Part shown: one piece after another, positions 13,628 through 58,834 of the stretch
How the letters are laid out: the number at the start of each line of letters is the position of its first letter
Position numbering within the stretch: position 1 is the stretch's first letter
Virus record (IMG/VR): IMGVR_UViG_3300027759_000046
Location: 189,138-253,137 of that record
Direction: 5' to 3' (one strand)
DNA length: 64,000 nucleotides
Position numbers and translations under genes: made by a program
Notes under the pieces: model-generated
Seen by the model: the letters and a program-made list of their open reading frames with translations, nothing else
Told to the model about the DNA's origin: nothing
Databases searched by the model: none

Positions 13628-13681
13628 TTGGATAAATAATTAAACTAGTATCTAGTACATAAAATACTCGTAAAGTTTAAC

Positions 13682-22314: not shown

Positions 22315-23781
22315 ATGGCTACAGCAACAGCATTTGCATATAACACAGGATCACCAATTGACGGGACCGACCAGGTCGGATCTCTCGCGGTCGGAATCCC
22401 AACATACGGTTTTGAATCAACTGGCCTTGAGTGGTGGGGCGGTCCCGATCAAGAATTGGGAATAGTGGTTGCAAAACCTGTTCCAAGCGAAAAACAACCG
22501 ACTCCAGTTGGAGAAAATCTTTATTTAGACGGCACACGTAAGGGAGTTGACATTGCATTGACTGGATCACCATCTCAGGTCGCTCATCAAAACTTTGGAT
22601 ATCAACAGTCTGTATTGGGAACAATCGGTATTGACTCTATTGATAAGGTAATGTTTAGCGTTTTAGTTCAGTTAGATACACCGGGCGTTCAGACAAATTC
22701 TCACTTTATTGGAGTTGGTAAAGCATCAATGAACTATCAGGGCAATCCATACCGTGGCTATCCAGGAAATGATAATGCGAGCTATGGATATTGCAGTGAC
22801 GGTAGTACATACGGAGGCGGCAGTGTTGATGTTTCGCAGTTAGCAACTTGGGGAAATGGTGATATTGTTGATATTGCGATTGATCGCTCAATAGATGCAA
22901 TGTGGGTTAGAGTAAACGGCGGCGATTGGAATAATGATCCGTCTGCTGACCCAAATAATCCAAGCGGTGGTCTGTCCGTACCGTTTGACGCAATATGTTA
23001 TCCAGTATTATGTCCAGGATACGACGGTACGATGACTATTCAGGCAAACCCGGCGTATGGAACACCAAATAATTTTAAATTTCTAGGAAGCGGTGAAACT
23101 GCATCAGTTGCATTTAGCCGAACCTCAAACAATCCTTCAACTAAAGAAGACGAATTTATCAGCATCGCATACGCTCTGCTCTATGGTCCAGGCGATATTG
23201 GCGCAAATCCTCCGTTTGCAGACGGTGCTGAAGCATCCGCTGCACTAACCGCTGCAGGATATTGGAATAGTTATTCTAGCTTCGGCAGCTCAGGATTCCA
23301 ATGGATGACAATGACAAGTATCGCTGACTCATCGGCTTCCGGTATTGGACAAAATAATATTACTGTTTCGATTACTCAAGGAGGTGGCGGTATGCAAACC
23401 GAGAATGGTATGTACCAAGCTGCAACATTCCCAGAAGAATATGGAGTTCCACTAAGCGGTAATCAAATCCGAAACACCAAAGCTGGTGTATTTACAGCAA
23501 CATTTAGCCAGCCCGTTCTGAATCCGCTAGTTGCATTTGCAAGCGTTGGTAATCCTGGATTACCAGTCCCAGTTCAATCAACTTTACCATTCACACCAAT
23601 TTTTGGTCAGGCTACAACATATCAAAACGAATGTAGTCCAACTCAATACACTCAATTTACCGGACGAGAAGGATTTAATATTATTCGAATAGATGGTACA
23701 GTCAGTAGCGTAACTTTTACGTATACTGTCGAGGAATTCTATTGCACCGTTTGTTTTGGATTCGTTGATCAAAATGCATAA
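22315..23781 (+). CDS. SPRY/B30.2-domain beta-rich virion or adhesin-like protein
   Basis: GDIVDIAID...WVRVNG.W SPRY signature; GATAAATAA at 22281. Confidence 0.7.
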   Translation: MATATAFAYNTGSPIDGTDQVGSLAVGIPTYGFESTGLEWWGGPDQELGIVVAKPVPSEKQPTPVGENLYLDGTRKGVDIALTGSPSQVAHQNFGYQQSVLGTIGIDSIDKVMFSVLVQLDTPGVQTNSHFIGVGKASMNYQGNPYRGYPGNDNASYGYCSDGSTYGGGSVDVSQLATWGNGDIVDIAIDRSIDAMWVRVNGGDWNNDPSADPNNPSGGLSVPFDAICYPVLCPGYDGTMTIQANPAYGTPNNFKFLGSGETASVAFSRTSNNPSTKEDEFISIAYALLYGPGDIGANPPFADGAEASAALTAAGYWNSYSSFGSSGFQWMTMTSIADSSASGIGQNNITVSITQGGGGMQTENGMYQAATFPEEYGVPLSGNQIRNTKAGVFTATFSQPVLNPLVAFASVGNPGLPVPVQSTLPFTPIFGQATTYQNECSPTQYTQFTGREGFNIIRIDGTVSSVTFTYTVEEFYCTVCFGFVDQNA

Positions 23782-23848
23782 TTTTAAAAAAAGCACAAGT
23801 TTATACCCAAAGTATAAAAATAGGATTAAAAATAAATTATAAATCTAC

Positions 23849-24328
23849 ATGAAAAGACACGTTCAAATTTTCGAAAATTTTGAAAGAGCGTTTGATAACG
23901 TTTACGGAGCAAATCCCTTAATAGAAAAAGCCAAAGTTGATCAAGACGGCGACGGCGATACTGATTACGTTGACGCAAAGGTTGCTCAATATCAAAAGGG
24001 CGGTATTAAAAAAGGCCAAGCAATTGCAAAGGCAAAAATGTTTGCAAAAAAGAATAATATTAAAGACTCTATCAAAGACTCGAATAAGACAGTAAAAGAG
24101 GGCTTTTTTAATAGATGGACAAAACCTTCTATTGATCAAGCTGCTCATGATTCAGTAAGGGGTCAAGGCCACAGCCACCGAGGAAACGACGATGGAGAGT
24201 ACATTATGTTTGACGGTCAAAAATTTAGCCAAGATCAAATTGAGTATGCTGACTATCATGATATGGGCAGAATTCCTAGGGTTGAAGATGGCATATTAAT
24301 TATTGCTGATCCAAATTGGAGTAATTAA
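23849..24328 (+). CDS. leader-tagged protein with DxDxDG Ca-binding-like loop
   Basis: MKRHVQIFENFE; DQDGDGDTDYVD. Confidence 0.55.
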   Translation: MKRHVQIFENFERAFDNVYGANPLIEKAKVDQDGDGDTDYVDAKVAQYQKGGIKKGQAIAKAKMFAKKNNIKDSIKDSNKTVKEGFFNRWTKPSIDQAAHDSVRGQGHSHRGNDDGEYIMFDGQKFSQDQIEYADYHDMGRIPRVEDGILIIADPNWSN

Positions 24329-24331
24329 TCT

Positions 24332-24359
24332 AAAACTGGTTGAGAGTATTAAGTAGAAT
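24332..24359 (+). promoter_or_regulatory. bipartite AAAAC-N15-AGTAGAAT promoter-like motif
   Basis: same spacing found at five other sites in the window (see findings). Confidence 0.6.
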
Positions 24360-24382
24360 AGGCTAAATCAAAAACTTAAAAT

Positions 24383-24580
24383 ATGTATTATTTAGCAAAA
24401 CTACGCTTTGAGTCAGAAGACGACAATGGCAAACAAAAAAAGATTAGAGAACAGTATTTGGTGCAAGCATCTTCAGTTGGAGAAGCTGAACAAAAATTAA
24501 TGGATCGATTTGGACAAGGAATTTCACCTTGCCAGTTAGAAGCAGTTCAAGAATCAAAAATCTTAGGCCTTATTGAATAA
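24383..24580 (+). CDS. DUF4494-like small protein
   Basis: NGKQKKIREQYLVQASSVGEAE resembles the Bacteroidota DUF4494 N-terminal domain. Confidence 0.7.
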   Translation: MYYLAKLRFESEDDNGKQKKIREQYLVQASSVGEAEQKLMDRFGQGISPCQLEAVQESKILGLIE

Positions 24581-24602
24581 AGGTTAGCTGAGACTAAAAA
24601 AG

Positions 24603-24628
24603 AAAAGGAGCATTAAGCTCCTTTTTTT
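24603..24628. terminator. bidirectional intrinsic terminator
   Basis: AAAAGGAGC-ATTAA-GCTCCTTTTTTT between convergent genes. Confidence 0.85.
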
Positions 24629-24848
24629 ATGTGAAATATGTTGGAAATTTAGAAGAGAGGCTCTTCAGTATAGTAGGATCATCTTTGCCTTCGTGCATCA
24701 GCTCATAGGCATGATCGAATATTTTGATGCTGGTGGCATTACCTATGATTGCATCAATCTTGCGACGAACAACTGACGTTGGCCCGTTTTCGTGTATCAG
24801 CTTAACTAGGTTAGCTGGCTCTGGAATAAAGTACTTGTTGAAACTCAT
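24627..24848 (-). CDS. hypothetical protein
   Basis: 73-aa ORF preceded by GTATAATA. Confidence 0.55.
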   Translation of the reverse strand: MSFNKYFIPEPANLVKLIHENGPTSVVRRKIDAIIGNATSIKIFDHAYELMHEGKDDPTILKSLSSKFPTYFT

Positions 24849-24872
24849 ATTTTTATTATACTCTGATTAAAC

Positions 24873-24903
24873 AAAAAAGGTTAGCTTTTTAGGGCTAACC
24901 TTT
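24873..24903 (-). terminator. intrinsic terminator closing the candidate ncRNA
   Basis: minus strand AAAGGTTAGC-CCTAAAAA-GCTAACCTTTTTT. Confidence 0.85.
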
Positions 24904-24904
24904 G

Positions 24905-25325
24905 GTATCGTGGGGAACGCGTATGGAAGGATTAGGGTTTACCTTCAATTTGATGCTGAGCTTGCGTTATAACGACAACCTTCGTACACTCCTGTCAGAG
25001 TCGACTCAAAGCAAGTTGGATCCGCTTGAATCACTATCGTGTTAACCACAACAGTACGAGTGCTTTATCCCACCTAGCAAAGGATTATTCAGCCATTTAA
25101 CGGGACTATTTTATACCCGTATGCCGATTGCAAAATACCATATATGTATATCAAAACCTTAGACTCCAGTGGTTAACTGGTTCAAGTTGACCGTTTGGTC
25201 TGCTGGTTTCAGCCAGCGCTTGCGGAGCATCCTCCTAATCTAAACCATTACCTGTTTTACAATCAGGTTGTTCTGGCACATACTCGATTGAAGCTCATGA
25301 CTTCCTCAACCGTTTCCCCTCGTAA
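24905..25325 (-). ncRNA. candidate large structured non-coding RNA (~420 nt), class unrecognised
   Basis: ORF-free gap in a gene-dense genome; 5' CGAGGGGAAACG pairs with 3' CGUUCCCCACG; many hairpins and long-range complements; followed by a terminator. Confidence 0.8.
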
Positions 25326-25346
25326 TTTAAAGAACTTATGTTAATA

Positions 25347-25562
25347 TTATAACGCTAATTCGGATTTCGGTTTTACTTTTAGCGAATTTTTTTCTAAAAA
25401 AGTTTGAAAACCTTCGTAGATGTAATTCGTTGTGCACTTAGTCGACTGTTGCAGAGTCTTTATGTAGGTGTGGCCGTTGGGCGCTAAGTAAAATCCAATT
25501 ACAGTTTCTTCGCCTTGATCGCCAATCAGGATCAAGTCTTCAAGTTGAATTGAGTCTCTCAT
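25347..25562 (-). CDS. hypothetical protein
   Basis: ORF overlapping the upstream stop codon. Confidence 0.5.
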   Translation of the reverse strand: MRDSIQLEDLILIGDQGEETVIGFYLAPNGHTYIKTLQQSTKCTTNYIYEGFQTFLEKNSLKVKPKSELAL

Positions 25563-25777
25563 TGTTTTTTATAGCGTCTGCGAAAGAAGATAGAGAGCCC
25601 AAAGAATAGAGCCGCAATACAGTACAATACGAAATTCGCTCTCCACAAAGTCCCAGTGAGGTGGATTAGCCAGTACTGGACGATGTCGAACCCGAACGGA
25701 TTGAAGAACAGAGCTATCATCGCGCACCATGTCGCTAGGTTGCCCAATAACGTTTTTCTCCAAGTTTCTACTATCAC
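25559..25777 (-). CDS. small two-TM membrane protein
   Basis: two hydrophobic segments and basic tail; start uncertain. Confidence 0.55.
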   Translation of the reverse strand: MIVETWRKTLLGNLATWCAMIALFFNPFGFDIVQYWLIHLTGTLWRANFVLYCIAALFFGLSIFFRRRYKKQ

Positions 25778-25825
25778 TATCCATAGATTTTTTGAAATTT
25801 GTAAATTCGAGTTTATTTATCCAGT

Positions 25826-26107
25826 TTACCACTTCGCTTCTTGACCAATATCCGGTAGAGCACAATGAAATCCTTGTAGTCTAGTTTTGGCCTCAAGAAA
25901 ACAGCCGCAAATTTTACACTGAACGAATGTTGGATTGAAATGATCGCATGCTTTACATAAGTCCATGCGACGAGTCTTTTCAATTTCCGGAACAAAAACC
26001 TTGTTCAAGATTCTTGACATTACTGTCGGTTGGCTTGATGTTTGAGAACCGCCGCCGCATCCACAATTAGCTGTGGTCGTTTCAGTAGTTTGGTTAGTTT
26101 CTGACAT
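25826..26107 (-). CDS. Cys-rich small protein (DUF6171-like)
   Basis: CGCGG; R...CKAC...QCKICGCFL.AK.RL...HC. Confidence 0.65.
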   Translation of the reverse strand: MSETNQTTETTTANCGCGGGSQTSSQPTVMSRILNKVFVPEIEKTRRMDLCKACDHFNPTFVQCKICGCFLEAKTRLQGFHCALPDIGQEAKW

Positions 26108-27082
26108 TTAATCTAATACTTTTTCAAAGACTCTTTTATCATCAAACTCCAGGTAGTTTTCAAGTAATTTACCTGAATTCTGACGATACTGAAGTACTGC
26201 AAGATCTTTGGCCTTTGCCTCAACCTCGATATCGAAAGTGAGTCCATAAGTATTTATCTTCTCATAAACATGATCGGCATGTGAACGTGCAATAACCGTA
26301 GGATCCTCGAACGTTTTCCTACAGCTTGAATAGTGAGTAAGAGGTGTATGGCCGTGCCAAGTAGTCGAAGCAAGACGTAGCGCGGCTTCCTCAGTAAGAT
26401 CGCCAGTATTGAAACGGTGATGATGGAAATCGAATGTGATTGGCGTGCCGATTTTGCAATAGACTAACGAGTAAAGATCGGCAACTGAATACTGGGCAGC
26501 CTTATCGTCGTTTTCGACAACTAGACGAGCTTTTGTATTTGGGTGTAATACTTTAAAATTCTCGCAGAACCTAGCGGCAGCCGATTCCCTGTCGCCATAG
26601 GATCCACCTAGATGAATATTAATTGGGAACTGATAGGTAATAGGTAAACCCATTAAGGTCATAATCTCGGCATGCTGGTTAAGATCCTTGATTGTTTTAC
26701 GAACAACATTTGGATTTGGAGAACACAAGACATCGAACTGGCCTGGATGCATTGAGATACGCATGCCATGCTGTAGCGCAAATTCGCCAATTGCTTGCAG
26801 ATCAGGTAGAATATCGGCAAAGTTAGGTAACTCAGTAATCTCGTACTCGGACATCCATGGAAAGATATCGCTAGACATACGATACACAAAGATATCGTTT
26901 GCAAGATTCCAGCGCAGAATTTTAAGAATGTCCTTGACGTTTTGATGAGCGAGCTCGCCACAATATACTTGACCCTTTTCCTGAAAGGTTCTCTTGATCA
27001 TGCCACGGTTGGCTGTAATCTTTTGGTCGGCTAGTGATAAGTTAATACAGCAGTAGCCAAGTCTGACGTTAGAATTTTGCAT
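26108..27082 (-). CDS. uvsE: UV-damage endonuclease
   Basis: RLGYCCIN, YRMSSD, SMHPGQF, ENDD, FDFHHH and EAKAKD; ATG at 27082. Confidence 0.95.
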   Translation of the reverse strand: MQNSNVRLGYCCINLSLADQKITANRGMIKRTFQEKGQVYCGELAHQNVKDILKILRWNLANDIFVYRMSSDIFPWMSEYEITELPNFADILPDLQAIGEFALQHGMRISMHPGQFDVLCSPNPNVVRKTIKDLNQHAEIMTLMGLPITYQFPINIHLGGSYGDRESAAARFCENFKVLHPNTKARLVVENDDKAAQYSVADLYSLVYCKIGTPITFDFHHHRFNTGDLTEEAALRLASTTWHGHTPLTHYSSCRKTFEDPTVIARSHADHVYEKINTYGLTFDIEVEAKAKDLAVLQYRQNSGKLLENYLEFDDKRVFEKVLD

Positions 27083-27095
27083 AGGTTTATTATAC

Positions 27096-27121
27096 AAAAA
27101 AAGGGACCGTAAGGTCCCTTT
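27096..27121 (-). terminator. intrinsic terminator
   Basis: minus strand AAAGGGACC-TTAC-GGTCCCTTTTTTT. Confidence 0.85.
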
Positions 27122-27140
27122 GATTTATAGTAAGCGGTTT

Positions 27141-27770
27141 TTAGAAATTAACCGATGAATAGTTTTTCGTAATTGACCTCAATACTCTCACAACGTCAAC
27201 TGCGTCCTGTAGAGCATCGTGTGTTACGATTCCGTCAATGCCTGCTCGCTTCATGCACTCAGCCAAATTCGGTAAACCTGCATCCTTTGTCCAATCCATG
27301 CACAAGATAGCTGGATCAATCATGCGTTGTCTGATCTGTACTGATGATGACCATCCTGTCAGTTTTTGCAGAAAGAGTTTATCAAATGTTGCAAAGTTTT
27401 TACCAGCAACGGTGATTCGGACTTGACCAGTTTTTGAGTCTGGATCGCCTAATCCGTTTGCCTGCAACCATAAGCCGAATGATTTTGCAACGAGGCCTTC
27501 GGGTAAGATATTGTATTTCTTACGCAAGTCAGCTCGCTCTTCTTTATTCGCTCGTTCCAATTCGCCAAGCTGAGCCAGAATATCCTTATTCATGACCAGT
27601 GCAAATGGGCTGCCTGTGTATTGAGGGTGTTCAACTAGACACTTAAATCTAGGCAGGTCCTCAATAGGTAATGGATTAGCTGTGTCCTCAATAACTGCAC
27701 CGATCTGAATCGTTTGGCAAGTTTCTGGATCTAATCCCGTTGTTTCTATGTCTATTGATACGTATTTCAT
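27141..27770 (-). CDS. DEDDh 3'-5' exonuclease
   Basis: DIETTGLD, GKNFATFD and HDALQDA. Confidence 0.9.
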   Translation of the reverse strand: MKYVSIDIETTGLDPETCQTIQIGAVIEDTANPLPIEDLPRFKCLVEHPQYTGSPFALVMNKDILAQLGELERANKEERADLRKKYNILPEGLVAKSFGLWLQANGLGDPDSKTGQVRITVAGKNFATFDKLFLQKLTGWSSSVQIRQRMIDPAILCMDWTKDAGLPNLAECMKRAGIDGIVTHDALQDAVDVVRVLRSITKNYSSVNF

Positions 27771-58301: not shown

Positions 58302-58401
58302 CGGTAACGGACTTCTTTTTGATTATTTATCAGCCCAATCTTTTCTTTGCAAAACCATGACCTTGGATAAATACTTTTAGTATAATACTTTTATACTACA
58401 T

Positions 58402-58770
58402 GGGGGTGCTTGGATTTGACGCGGATGGTTCAAGTATGCTCGCACGCCGAGGATGATGCTAAGACTCGCTAAAACGTATCAAAACGATAAGTGGAAACAC
58501 TAACTTCTGGAGCCTAGTTAACGCTGGCGTTAGCACTCCGGTTACTGAAGAGCTTTTAGCTGCATAAGTAACCAAGCGGCAACTGCTTGACCGAACCAAA
58601 GTTGCAAAACCAGCATGGCGTAGCGGCCAAGTCTAACCGTTACCGACTTTTAGCTCTAAGTCGTTAAAGAATGAGATAGTTGGTCCAGTTAGAAAATGGG
58701 ACTAAGCGTGTGAACGAGAGTTTACTCGAAAATCTTGCGGACACGGGTTCGACTCCCGTCACCTCCACCA
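58402..58770 (+). ncRNA. ssrA: tmRNA
   Basis: 5' GGGGGTG pairs with 3' CACCTCC-ACCA with a G3:U wobble; GGATTTGAC 5' motif; T-arm CGGGTTCGACTCCCG; tag ORF 58493-58567 GNTNFWSLVNAGVSTPVTEELLAA*. Confidence 0.96.
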
Positions 58771-58777
58771 TGTCTTA

Positions 58778-58802
58778 AAGGCTTCCATTACGGAAGCCTT
58801 TT
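58778..58802 (+). terminator. intrinsic terminator after tmRNA
   Basis: AAAGGCTTCC-ATTAC-GGAAGCCTTTT. Confidence 0.85.
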
Positions 58803-58834
58803 CTTTTTAGACAGCCTGATTGATAAATAAGAGT

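What the first reader, a model, noticed from the sequence alone, without database searches (positions are those of the whole stretch)
24905..25325. Unannotated ~420-nt highly structured RNA with closed ends and multiple possible pseudoknots
Seen on the - strand, in the only large ORF-free gap besides the tmRNA locus. Terminal helix: CGAGGGGAAACG/CGUUCCCCACG. Hairpins: GGUUGAGG/CUUCAAUC, ACCUG/CAGGU, GCUGG/CCAGC, GACC/GGUC, CCAGU/ACUGG, ACGGG/CCCGU, CUGUUGUG/CACGAUAG and GAAGG/CCUUC. Long-range complements: UUAACCAC/GUGGUUAA (loop-loop), UGAGCUU/AAGCUCA, GGUUUA/UAAACC, GAUUAGG/CCUAAUC, GAUGCU/AGCAUC, UCCGC/GCGGA, CUUGAA/UUCAAG and UCGUAC/GUACGA. A strong terminator follows immediately. It lies downstream of a late motif (25812) and two small genes, one a membrane protein. 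I cannot match it to tRNA, tmRNA, group I/II introns or canonical RNase P. Inference: a new or highly diverged large phage ncRNA or ribozyme, comparable in complexity to the GOLLD/ROOL/OLE classes.
Basis: partly seen in the sequence, partly recalled or inferred. Interest (0 to 1): 0.88.

Follow-up and report, generated by a model that had tools for sequence, protein, structure and literature searches.

The report
Tandem manA-like phage RNA, highly expressed
The gap holds a real, very abundant, roughly 420-456-nt structured RNA of a freshwater jumbo phage; it is not a new RNA class but two copies of the known manA fold fused into one chain with helices exchanged between the copies, and it behaves as a free-standing RNA gene, not a gene leader.

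Summary
The structured RNA is real. In 14 distinct homologues, 41 of 107 modelled base pairs show compensatory changes and under 1% of cells are non-canonical.

It is not a new class. Rfam's manA model (RF01745) matches both halves below its gathering score of 55.2 bits:
- D1, window 25311-25095: 44.6 bits, E 4e-10.
- D2, window 25095-24926: 37.6 bits, E 1.5e-8.
- The orthologous D1 of homologue L115 scores 56.3 bits, above the cut-off.

The architecture is new. One closing helix encloses both domains. The basal helix of each domain's third hairpin is strand-swapped between domains (helices X1 and X2, both with compensatory changes). The conserved ACCA/UGGU kissing-loop pair is split, one half per domain.

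In metatranscriptomes it is a discrete transcript at 50-100 times the depth of neighbouring genes:
- Transcript ends are 25326 and 24871; a shorter form ends at 24910.
- No read-through into the downstream 73-aa gene was seen.
- At least 20 RNA runs hold it.
- One run shows a head-to-tail junction, which is unexplained.

A 2026 cryo-EM preprint reports that manA RNAs self-assemble into RNA-only cages.

Best reading: a trans-acting, self-assembling phage ncRNA that is a single-chain manA dimer. A tandem riboswitch is the main rival.

The parts
24871..25326 (-). Full transcript unit (456 nt): 5' end at 25326, 3' end at 24871 after the terminator U-run.
   Evidence: The X15 metatranscriptome contig is a closed 456-nt cycle joining 25326 to 24871, at depth 426 against 0-8 on flanking genes.
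24910..25312 (-). Shorter form assembled in most RNA runs. Its 3' end at 24910 is the end of the terminal helix, so the terminator hairpin is missing.
   Evidence: Contigs span 24910-25312, 24910-25309 and 24910-25310 in X16, X17 and X20. An Illumina adaptor abuts 24910 in X16. Most RNA runs hold 0.72-0.87 of the sampled words.
24909..25322 (-). Terminal helix T (25322-25313 paired with 24918-24909), enclosing the whole RNA.
   Evidence: 4 of 7 core pairs show compensatory changes in 14 sequences.
25285..25312 (-). Hairpin H1. The stem covaries; the 10-nt loop AAGUCAUGAG is nearly invariant and contains the self-complementary UCAUGA.
   Evidence: 7 of 9 stem pairs are compensatory. The loop is identical in 13 of 14 sequences, and UCAUGA in all 14.
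25095..25311 (-). Domain D1: first manA-like domain. It keeps the UAACCA loop and lacks the GUGGUG loop.
   Evidence: Rfam RF01745 scores 44.6 bits, E 4.2e-10, over model positions 1-192. The orthologous domain scores 56.3 bits in L115 and 53.6 bits in L157.
24926..25095 (-). Domain D2: second manA-like domain. It keeps UGGCUGAAUAA, the GUGGU loop and the GGUAAACCCUAAUCC hairpin, and lacks the ACCA loop.
   Evidence: Rfam RF01745 scores 37.6 bits, E 1.5e-8, over model positions 23-182. A covariance model built from D2 finds the canonical manA of L219 colinearly but weakly (14.4 bits, E 0.12).
24921..25283 (-). Closing helix C: GUAUG (25283-25279) pairs with CAUAC (24925-24921). The 5' strand belongs to D1 and the 3' strand to D2, at the position of manA's own closing helix.
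   Evidence: No non-canonical cell in 70; one compensatory pair and two one-sided changes.
24949..25155 (-). Inter-domain helix X1: UUUGAU (25155-25150) pairs with AUCAAA (24954-24949). These are the 5' strand of D1's third hairpin and the 3' strand of D2's.
   Evidence: All 6 pairs are kept in every sequence of A2. There are two independent compensatory changes, in L115 and L030. Column shuffles give 0.18 such helices per RNA.
24973..25126 (-). Inter-domain helix X2: CGGCA (25126-25122) pairs with UGUCG (24977-24973). It is the reciprocal strand pair of X1, and together they form a four-way junction.
   Evidence: No non-canonical cell in 70. One position has three pair types (AU, UA, GC), and one G-U becomes A-U.
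25045..25173 (-). Candidate kissing contact K1: ACCA in the D1 loop (25173-25170) with UGGU in the D2 hairpin (25048-25045).
   Evidence: Pairable in all 14 sequences. The only change, A to G in 3 sequences, gives G-U. There is no compensatory change. It matches the two conserved loops of the manA consensus.
24876..24903 (-). Intrinsic terminator hairpin, followed by a U-run to 24871.
   Evidence: Found by the terminator scan. Stem sequences differ but stay paired in all four clades. Depth on the downstream gene is zero.
25327..25340 (-). Conserved block just upstream of the 5' end (contains GTTCTTT at 25329-25335). It may be a promoter element or a processing signal; which is unresolved.
   Evidence: Invariant or nearly so in the alignments. 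There is no sigma-70 match, and the motif is not enriched in the window.
24627..24848 (-). Downstream 73-aa gene of unknown function. It is the would-be regulated gene under the riboswitch rival.
   Evidence: It follows the RNA in 13 of 14 homologues but not in L115. Its homologues occur without the RNA in L200-L205, L208 and L212. No family match was found.

Best explanation
Window 25326-24871 (minus strand) is a free-standing gene for an abundant structured non-coding RNA of a ~253-kb freshwater phage.

Shown:
- The RNA is two manA-class domains in one chain.
- The domains are not simply side by side. One closing helix (C) and an extra terminal helix (T) enclose both. The basal helix of the third hairpin is exchanged between the domains (X1, X2), giving a four-way junction.
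- The two conserved manA loops ACCA and UGGU are divided, one per domain, so that D1 can kiss D2.
- The transcript ends at its own intrinsic terminator and accumulates far above its neighbours.

Inferred:
- It works like other manA RNAs, which in vitro assemble into RNA-only oligomers through inter-molecular kissing loops. On this reading it is a covalent, strand-swapped manA dimer that folds into a compact particle.
- It may assemble further, for example through the invariant palindromic UCAUGA loop of H1.
- It acts in trans during infection as a scaffold, container or decoy, not by sensing a ligand for the next gene.
- The cellular target is unknown.
For: Structure:
- RNAalifold on 7 sequences gives 127 pairs, 41 of them compensatory.
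- My model on 14 sequences has 107 pairs, 41 compensatory, with 13 of 1498 cells non-canonical and 12 G-U pairs that fix the strand.

Homology to manA, twice:
-.

Inter-domain helices:
- X1 and X2 each carry compensatory changes in two independent lineages.
- The column-shuffle null expects 0.18 helices of X1's quality per RNA.
- The local, non-swapped hairpin has mismatches in L030 and L115 for D1 and cannot form in D2 (hand check of the alignment; non-canonical marks).

Free-standing expression:
- Depth is 426 against 0-8 on flanks in X15.
- RNA-only contigs with zero flank coverage appear in X16, X17 and X20, from four different studies.
- At least 20 RNA runs hold 72-100% of the sampled words.

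No coupling to the next gene:
- No read-through was seen.
- In L115 a convergent gene follows the RNA.
- Homologues of the 73-aa gene lack the RNA elsewhere.
- There is no conserved antiterminator.

Selection:
- The RNA is 89-92% identical where the adjacent gene is 72-82% identical at nucleotide level.

Assembly:
- manA RNAs form a 60-mer, decamers and octamers through kissing loops L5-L7', L8-L9' and L3-L8' (bioRxiv 10.64898/2026.07.01.735769).
Against: - Assembly of this particular RNA was not tested and cannot be tested with these tools.
- The manA cages were made in vitro at high RNA and Mg concentrations, and their biological role is unknown.
- K1 and the H1 palindrome are conserved but show no covariation. 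K1 needs the top two pairs of the D2 hairpin to open.
- My mapping of K1 to the preprint's L5-L7' is an inference from helix order, not from coordinates.
- X1 and X2 rest on only two diverged lineages (L030, L115).
- Contig depth is a crude measure of abundance, and the runs were selected for holding this stretch.
- A terminated riboswitch leader can also accumulate.
- The RNA sits directly upstream of a co-oriented gene in 13 of 14 homologues.
Confidence: 0.6

Rival explanations
1. Tandem riboswitch. The two manA-like aptamers bind a metabolite cooperatively, as in tandem glycine riboswitches, and the terminator at 24903-24876 is the expression platform controlling the 73-aa gene.
For: - manA was proposed as a riboswitch candidate found in 5' UTRs (PMC2864571).
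- The RNA is immediately upstream of a co-oriented gene in 13 of 14 homologues.
- A terminator sits between the RNA and that gene.
- In the window/L003/L196 clade the terminator's 5' strand is complementary to the D1 UAACCA loop: -10.8 kcal/mol against -7.3 +/- 1.5 for shuffles.
Against: - That complementarity is absent in L020, L030 and L115, and no other conserved antiterminator exists.
- L115 has no downstream co-oriented gene.
- The 73-aa gene family occurs without the RNA, and many close phage relatives lack the RNA altogether.
- No read-through was seen in four metatranscriptomes, although the RNA is 50-100 times above its neighbours.
- The downstream gene has no link to any metabolite.
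Confidence: 0.2
2. The RNA is circularised in vivo, for example by a phage or host RNA ligase acting on ends held near each other by helix T. It would then function as a nuclease-resistant circular RNA. This is compatible with the best explanation.
For: The X15 contig is a closed 456-nt cycle joining 25326 to 24871 with no extra letters, at depth 426.
Against: - It was seen in only 1 of 4 runs laid. The other three give linear 401-403-nt contigs that end at 24910, one with an adaptor abutting that end.
- Most RNA runs hold only about 0.87 of the words, meaning they lack the terminator part.
- A few junction reads from RT template switching or ligation of a very abundant RNA would be enough to close a de Bruijn cycle.
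- The joined ends are exactly where a start or processing site and a terminator release site would lie.
Confidence: 0.12
3. It is a ribozyme: a self-cleaving, ligating or RNase P-like catalyst.
For: Large, conserved, complex fold with defined ends.
Against: No Rfam ribozyme family matches, even at E up to 10 in the region. Both halves are explained by manA, for which no catalysis is known.
Confidence: 0.03

Closest known systems
manA RNA motif (Rfam RF01745; Weinberg et al. 2010, PMC2864571)
   Same: - Each half aligns to the manA covariance model with a significant E-value, and the hairpin order is the same.
- The signature sequences are shared: (U)GNCUGAAUAA ... UAAgG, the GUGGU and ACCA loops, and the GGUA...AAUCC terminal hairpin.
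- Like manA, it is phage-borne.
   Different: - Both window domains score below the gathering threshold.
- There are two domains in one chain under a shared closing helix, with a strand-swapped third helix, and each domain lacks one of the two kissing loops.
- There is an extra terminal helix and an enlarged invariant H1 loop.
- The source is a freshwater jumbo phage, not a marine T4-like cyanophage or Photobacterium.
- It has its own terminator and is not linked to mannose, nucleotide or photosynthesis genes.
manA RNA-only assemblies (cryo-EM preprint, bioRxiv 10.64898/2026.07.01.735769)
   Same: Protomer-protomer contacts through kissing loops. The ACCA/UGGU pair here is the likely equivalent of L5-L7' (my inference from helix order).
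   Different: - There, single ~190-nt protomers form pentamers, decamers or a 60-mer in vitro.
- Here two protomers are covalently fused with exchanged strands, and the kissing chain is capped at both outer ends.
- The oligomeric state of this RNA is unknown.
GOLLD / ROOL / OLE large ornate RNAs (PMC12286853)
   Same: Large, highly structured, often phage- or prophage-associated ncRNAs of unknown function. ROOL and GOLLD form RNA-only multimeric cages.
   Different: No sequence or structure match to those Rfam families. This RNA is smaller and built from manA modules.
Tandem glycine riboswitch
   Same: Two homologous structured domains in series, tied by inter-domain contacts and followed by one terminator.
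   Different: No ligand is known, there is no conserved switching helix, the downstream gene is dispensable, and the helices are truly strand-swapped instead of docked.

Membership tests
manA RNA (RF01745) | Covariance-model score at or above Rfam's gathering threshold (55.2 bits). | tested here: inconclusive
   Window D1 scores 44.6 bits and D2 37.6 bits, both below the threshold although E is 4e-10 and 1.5e-8. The orthologous D1 scores 56.3 bits in L115 (above) and 53.6 bits in L157.
manA RNA (RF01745) | Conserved core motifs: GNCUGAAUAA...UAAgG, the GUGGUG loop, the uaACCA loop and the GGUA...AAUCC hairpin. | tested here: met
   All motifs are present across the two domains taken together. 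D1 lacks GUGGUG and D2 lacks ACCA.
manA RNA (RF01745) | Each unit is closed by its own closing helix and has a local third hairpin. | tested here: not met
   The closing helix C joins the D1 5' strand to the D2 3' strand. The third-hairpin basal helices are exchanged (X1, X2), with compensatory support.
manA RNA (RF01745) | Position in the 5' UTR of mannose/fructose, nucleotide, ibpA or photosynthesis genes (cis-regulatory). | tested here: not met
   It has its own terminator. The downstream gene encodes an unknown 73-aa protein, is absent in L115, and shows no read-through.
manA RNA (RF01745) | Self-assembly into discrete homo-oligomers. | not testable with these tools
   This needs SEC or cryo-EM. 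Complex prediction refuses RNA-only jobs.
Tandem riboswitch | A conserved alternative pairing (antiterminator) linking the aptamer to the terminator. | tested here: not met
   The best partner of the terminator's 5' strand differs between clades and is no better than shuffles in L020, L030 and L115.
Tandem riboswitch | Ligand binding. | not testable with these tools
   Biochemical assay required.
GOLLD / ROOL / OLE | Match to the family covariance model. | tested here: not met
   No such hit at gathering score or at E up to 10.
Circular RNA | Back-splice-like head-to-tail junction seen reproducibly in RNA. | tested here: inconclusive
   The junction 25326/24871 appears in X15 only. Three other runs give linear contigs.

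The most novel reading that the evidence does not exclude
Nature has fused two manA protomers into one strand-swapped chain and expresses it as a free, very abundant phage RNA. This would be the first in-vivo and evolutionary evidence that protomer-protomer contacts of manA RNAs are under selection. It would mean that manA-class RNAs are self-assembling, trans-acting particles and not riboswitches. The RNA may in addition be circularised.
Probability: 0.35. Interest if true: 0.8.

Novelty: new variant of a known kind. Interest (0 to 1): 0.6.

Why it matters
manA has been an orphan 'riboswitch candidate' since 2010. In 2026 it was reported to build RNA-only cages in vitro, with no evidence that this matters in cells. 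This locus adds three things:
- A natural single-chain dimer whose inter-domain helices covary, so contact between two manA folds is selected.
- A gene layout (own terminator, dispensable neighbour) and expression data (a discrete RNA 50-100 times above its flanks, present in at least 20 lake and estuary metatranscriptomes) that argue for a trans-acting RNA.
- A defined roughly 420-nt construct for cryo-EM and for infection experiments.

It also shows that Rfam's manA threshold misses diverged freshwater members.

Tried and rejected
- Rfam at gathering score finds only the tmRNA, which explains why the RNA was unannotated.
- blastn against INPHARED phages, in both near and distant modes, found nothing.
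- Looser DNA patterns in viral and metagenome contigs gave mostly chance hits, and none of them carried manA.
- Related phages that share the UvdE and DUF4494 genes often lack the RNA, and no diverged manA sits in its place.
- A pattern for canonical tandem manA gave only coding-sequence chance matches plus one single canonical manA, in L217/L219 at 173 bits. That scan ran at gathering score, so sub-threshold tandems could have been missed.
- A sigma-70 promoter for the RNA: none was found. GTTCTTT as a recurrent phage promoter motif: it is not enriched.
- A conserved antiterminator: none.
- The function of the 73-aa neighbour gave no lead.
- A full-length (420-nt) covariance model could not be built within the tool's size limit. 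Only a D2 model (R1) was made, and it does not detect D1.

Full report
**What is there**

With ORFs of at least 60 aa, the window has only two gaps of 250 nt or more: 24849-25346 and the tmRNA locus 58302-58819. The window is identical to part of a 253-kb IMG/VR viral contig from a freshwater sample (L004). It encodes a large terminase, a baseplate wedge protein, UvdE, a DNA ligase and a guanylate kinase, so it belongs to a jumbo phage. It has no close relative in INPHARED. On the minus strand the gap ends in an intrinsic terminator: stem 24903-24876, then a U-run.

**Is the structure real?**

The single-sequence fold is only modestly better than shuffles (z = -2.6). The proof comes from homologues. 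I collected 14 distinct versions of the whole ~450-nt unit:
- from loci fetched through the neighbouring UvdE gene;
- from DNA patterns;
- from contigs encoding homologues of the downstream 73-aa protein.

They are aligned as A3. Identity to the window ranges from 99.8% to 64%.

- RNAalifold on the first seven sequences predicts 127 pairs, 41 of them with compensatory double changes.
- My hand-curated model has 107 pairs on 14 sequences. Of these, 41 are compensatory and 13 show one-sided changes, and only 13 of 1498 cells are non-canonical.
- Twelve G-U pairs in the window copy fix the minus strand.
- The RNA is more conserved (89-92% nt) than the adjacent protein gene (72-82% nt) in the same genomes.

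**What it is**

Rfam at gathering thresholds reports only the tmRNA. In E-value mode the manA model RF01745 matches both halves:
- The 5' half, 25311-25095, matches end to end: 44.6 bits, E 4.2e-10. In a scan of the whole window this is still E 3.3e-8.
- The 3' half, 25095-24926, matches when scanned alone: 37.6 bits, E 1.5e-8, model positions 23-182.
- The orthologous 5' domain scores 56.3 bits in the most diverged homologue L115, above the 55.2-bit cut-off, and 53.6 bits in L157.
- A covariance model built from the 3' domain alone finds the canonical manA of a marine viral contig (L219, 173 bits to Rfam) colinearly but weakly: 14.4 bits, E 0.12.

So the RNA consists of two manA-class domains, D1 and D2. 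The RNA was unannotated because both domains fall below Rfam's threshold.

**Architecture**

The two domains are not independent neighbours.
1. *Shared closing helix.* manA's closing helix is formed here by GUAUG at the start of D1 (25283-25279) and CAUAC after the last hairpin of D2 (24925-24921). D1 and D2 are joined by only 4 nt where D1's 3' strand and D2's 5' strand of that helix would be.
2. *Extra terminal helix.* Helix T (25322-25313 / 24918-24909) encloses everything, including hairpin H1.
3. *Strand-swapped third hairpin.* An unbiased scan of all column pairs for helices that pair in every sequence recovers the expected local helices plus two inter-domain ones.
   - X1, UUUGAU/AUCAAA (25155-25150 / 24954-24949), changes to UUCGAU/AUCGAA in L115 and to UUUGAC/GUCAAA in L030.
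   - X2, CGGCA/UGUCG (25126-25122 / 24977-24973), has A-U, U-A and G-C at one position, and a G-U that becomes A-U at another.
   - These four strands are exactly the basal strands of manA's third hairpin in D1 and D2, so that helix is strand-swapped and forms a four-way junction.
   - Column shuffles give 0.18 helices of X1's quality per RNA, against five observed; the other four are accepted helices.
   - The non-swapped hairpin has a mismatch in L030 and in L115 for D1 and cannot form in D2.
4. *Split kissing loops.* The two conserved manA loops are divided. D1 keeps UAACCA but has GAUG where GUGGUG should be. D2 keeps GUGGU but has GACA where ACCA should be. ACCA (25173-25170) and UGGU (25048-25045) can pair in all 14 sequences, and the only change (A to G) gives G-U. 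This is conservation, not covariation.
5. *Invariant H1 loop.* H1's stem covaries at 7 of 9 pairs, while its 10-nt loop AAGUCAUGAG is identical in 13 of 14 sequences. Its self-complementary core UCAUGA is in all 14. A palindrome this short is not rare by chance, so it is only a lead for dimerisation.

- one is a real helix (UCGUAC/GUACGA, the D2 junction helix);
- one survives as the 4-bp kissing core;
- six are not conserved.

**Expression**

Public metatranscriptomes hold the stretch. I laid four runs from four studies on 23500-27500.
- X15 gives word depth 426 on the RNA against 0-8 on all flanking genes.
- X16, X17 and X20 each give a single contig, 24910-25312, 24910-25309 and 24910-25310, and nothing on the flanks.
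- No run covers the downstream 73-aa gene.
- In X16 an Illumina adaptor abuts 24910, the last base of helix T, which marks a real 3' end there.
- A second search finds at least 20 RNA runs from about 18 studies (lakes, freshwater, estuary) holding 72-100% of the RNA's sampled words. Most hold 0.87, which matches the ~403-nt form without the terminator hairpin.

Caveats: contig depth is crude, contigs carry no strand, and the runs were chosen because they hold this stretch.

**An unexplained junction**

The X15 contig (486 nt) is a closed cycle. Position 25326 is joined to 24871 with no extra letters, which is a 456-nt unit plus the 30-nt k-1 overlap.
- This places the ends exactly: 5' at an A three bases after the invariant GTTCTTT block, and 3' at the end of the terminator U-run.
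- It could be a true circular RNA. It could also be a few template-switch or ligation chimeras of a very abundant RNA, which would be enough to close a de Bruijn cycle.
- The other three runs are linear. The cap on read laying prevented a further look.
- No sigma-70 promoter precedes the RNA, and GTTCTTT is not a recurrent motif.
- The 5' end could be a phage-specific start. It could also be a processing site: AA|AUU fits the RNase E preference (my own knowledge). In that case the transcript would start at the GGATAAATA motif at 25814-25822, a motif that also precedes the tmRNA gene.

**Cis or trans?**

For a leader or riboswitch role:
- manA was proposed as a riboswitch candidate in 5' UTRs (PMC2864571).
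- A co-oriented 73-aa gene follows the terminator in 13 of 14 homologues.

Against it:
- In L115 the RNA is followed by a convergent DUF4494 gene.
- Homologues of the 73-aa gene occur without the RNA (L200-L205, L208, L212).
- Many close relatives of the phage lack the RNA, and nothing manA-like sits in its place.
- The terminator stem changes sequence freely between clades while staying paired, and no upstream partner is conserved.
- No read-through is seen.

In the window's own clade the terminator's 5' strand is complementary to the D1 UAACCA loop (-10.8 kcal/mol against -7.3 +/- 1.5 for shuffles). This is not so in the other three clades, so I record it but do not build on it.

**How it most likely works**

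A July 2026 preprint (bioRxiv 10.64898/2026.07.01.735769) reports cryo-EM structures in which single manA RNAs form a 60-mer T=1 cage, decamers and octamers. These are built from pentamers held by inter-molecular kissing loops L5-L7', L8-L9' and L3-L8'. The preprint does not mention tandem forms.

Numbering manA's helices in order makes L5 the GUGGUG loop and L7 the ACCA loop. That mapping is my inference. On that reading the RNA here is a covalent manA dimer:
- the L5-L7' contact is satisfied between D1 and D2;
- its two outer partners have been lost;
- the closing and third helices are exchanged between the protomers.

Shown: the fold, the double homology, the swapped helices, and a discrete abundant transcript.

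Inferred: that the RNA forms a compact particle or further oligomers and acts in trans. I give this about 0.6.

The main rival is a tandem riboswitch (about 0.2). In-vivo circularisation (about 0.12) is compatible with either. Chance or non-function is excluded by the covariation.

**Novelty and verdict**

This is not a new class. It is a new variant of manA: single-chain, strand-swapped, free-standing and from a freshwater jumbo phage, where known manA RNAs come from marine T4-like cyanophages and Photobacterium. A narrow pattern search for canonical tandem manA in IMG/VR found none.

It matters because it gives evolutionary and expression evidence bearing on whether manA-manA contacts and assemblies are biological, and it offers a defined construct to test that.

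Interest 0.6.

Noticed in passing
window 58402-58770 (+): The phage encodes a tmRNA (113.8 bits) with tag peptide GNTNFWSLVNAGVSTPVTEELLAA. It is preceded by GGATAAATA (58365-58373) and a TATAAT box.
   Followed up: partly
window 25814-25822 (-), 58365-58373 (+), 13630-13638 (+): The motif GGATAAATA occurs three times against 0.97 expected. It lies upstream of the small-gene operon that precedes the RNA and upstream of the tmRNA, so it may be a phage promoter element.
   Followed up: partly
window 24871/25326; run X15: A head-to-tail junction gives a closed 456-nt contig cycle for the RNA in one metatranscriptome. Circular RNA or library artefact: undecided.
   Followed up: partly
window 24383-26107 and loci L158-L191, L200-L212: The stretch between UvdE/DUF6171-like and the convergent DUF4494 gene is an indel hot spot. 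Small genes of 71-95 aa, a 400-aa gene and the RNA come and go among close relatives.
   Followed up: partly
L233 1671-1707: A 2.4-kb contig carrying the RNA is binned in an uncultured Holophagaceae MAG from a freshwater run. This is either a weak host hint or mis-binning.
   Followed up: no
window 24903-24894 vs 25177-25169: In the window/L003/L196 clade only, the terminator's 5' strand AAAGGUUAGC is complementary to the D1 loop AG(U/C)UAACCA, mimicking D2's GUGGUUAA.
   Followed up: partly
window 25235-25224 and 25001-24988: The stems of the D1 GAUG hairpin (GGAG/CUCC) and the D2 GACA hairpin (CUCU/GGAG) change in parallel, so cross-pairing between the two hairpins stays possible in all clades. 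This could be a further strand exchange, or chance between purine-rich and pyrimidine-rich runs.
   Followed up: no
L219 2966-3189: A canonical manA (173 bits) sits directly behind a near-consensus sigma-70 promoter (TTGACA-17-TATATT, with TG) and about 200 nt ahead of the next gene. No clear terminator was found.
   Followed up: partly
search hit H1, LR756502.1: The closest UvdE in INPHARED (54% identity) is in a 642-kb uncultured phage genome.
   Followed up: no
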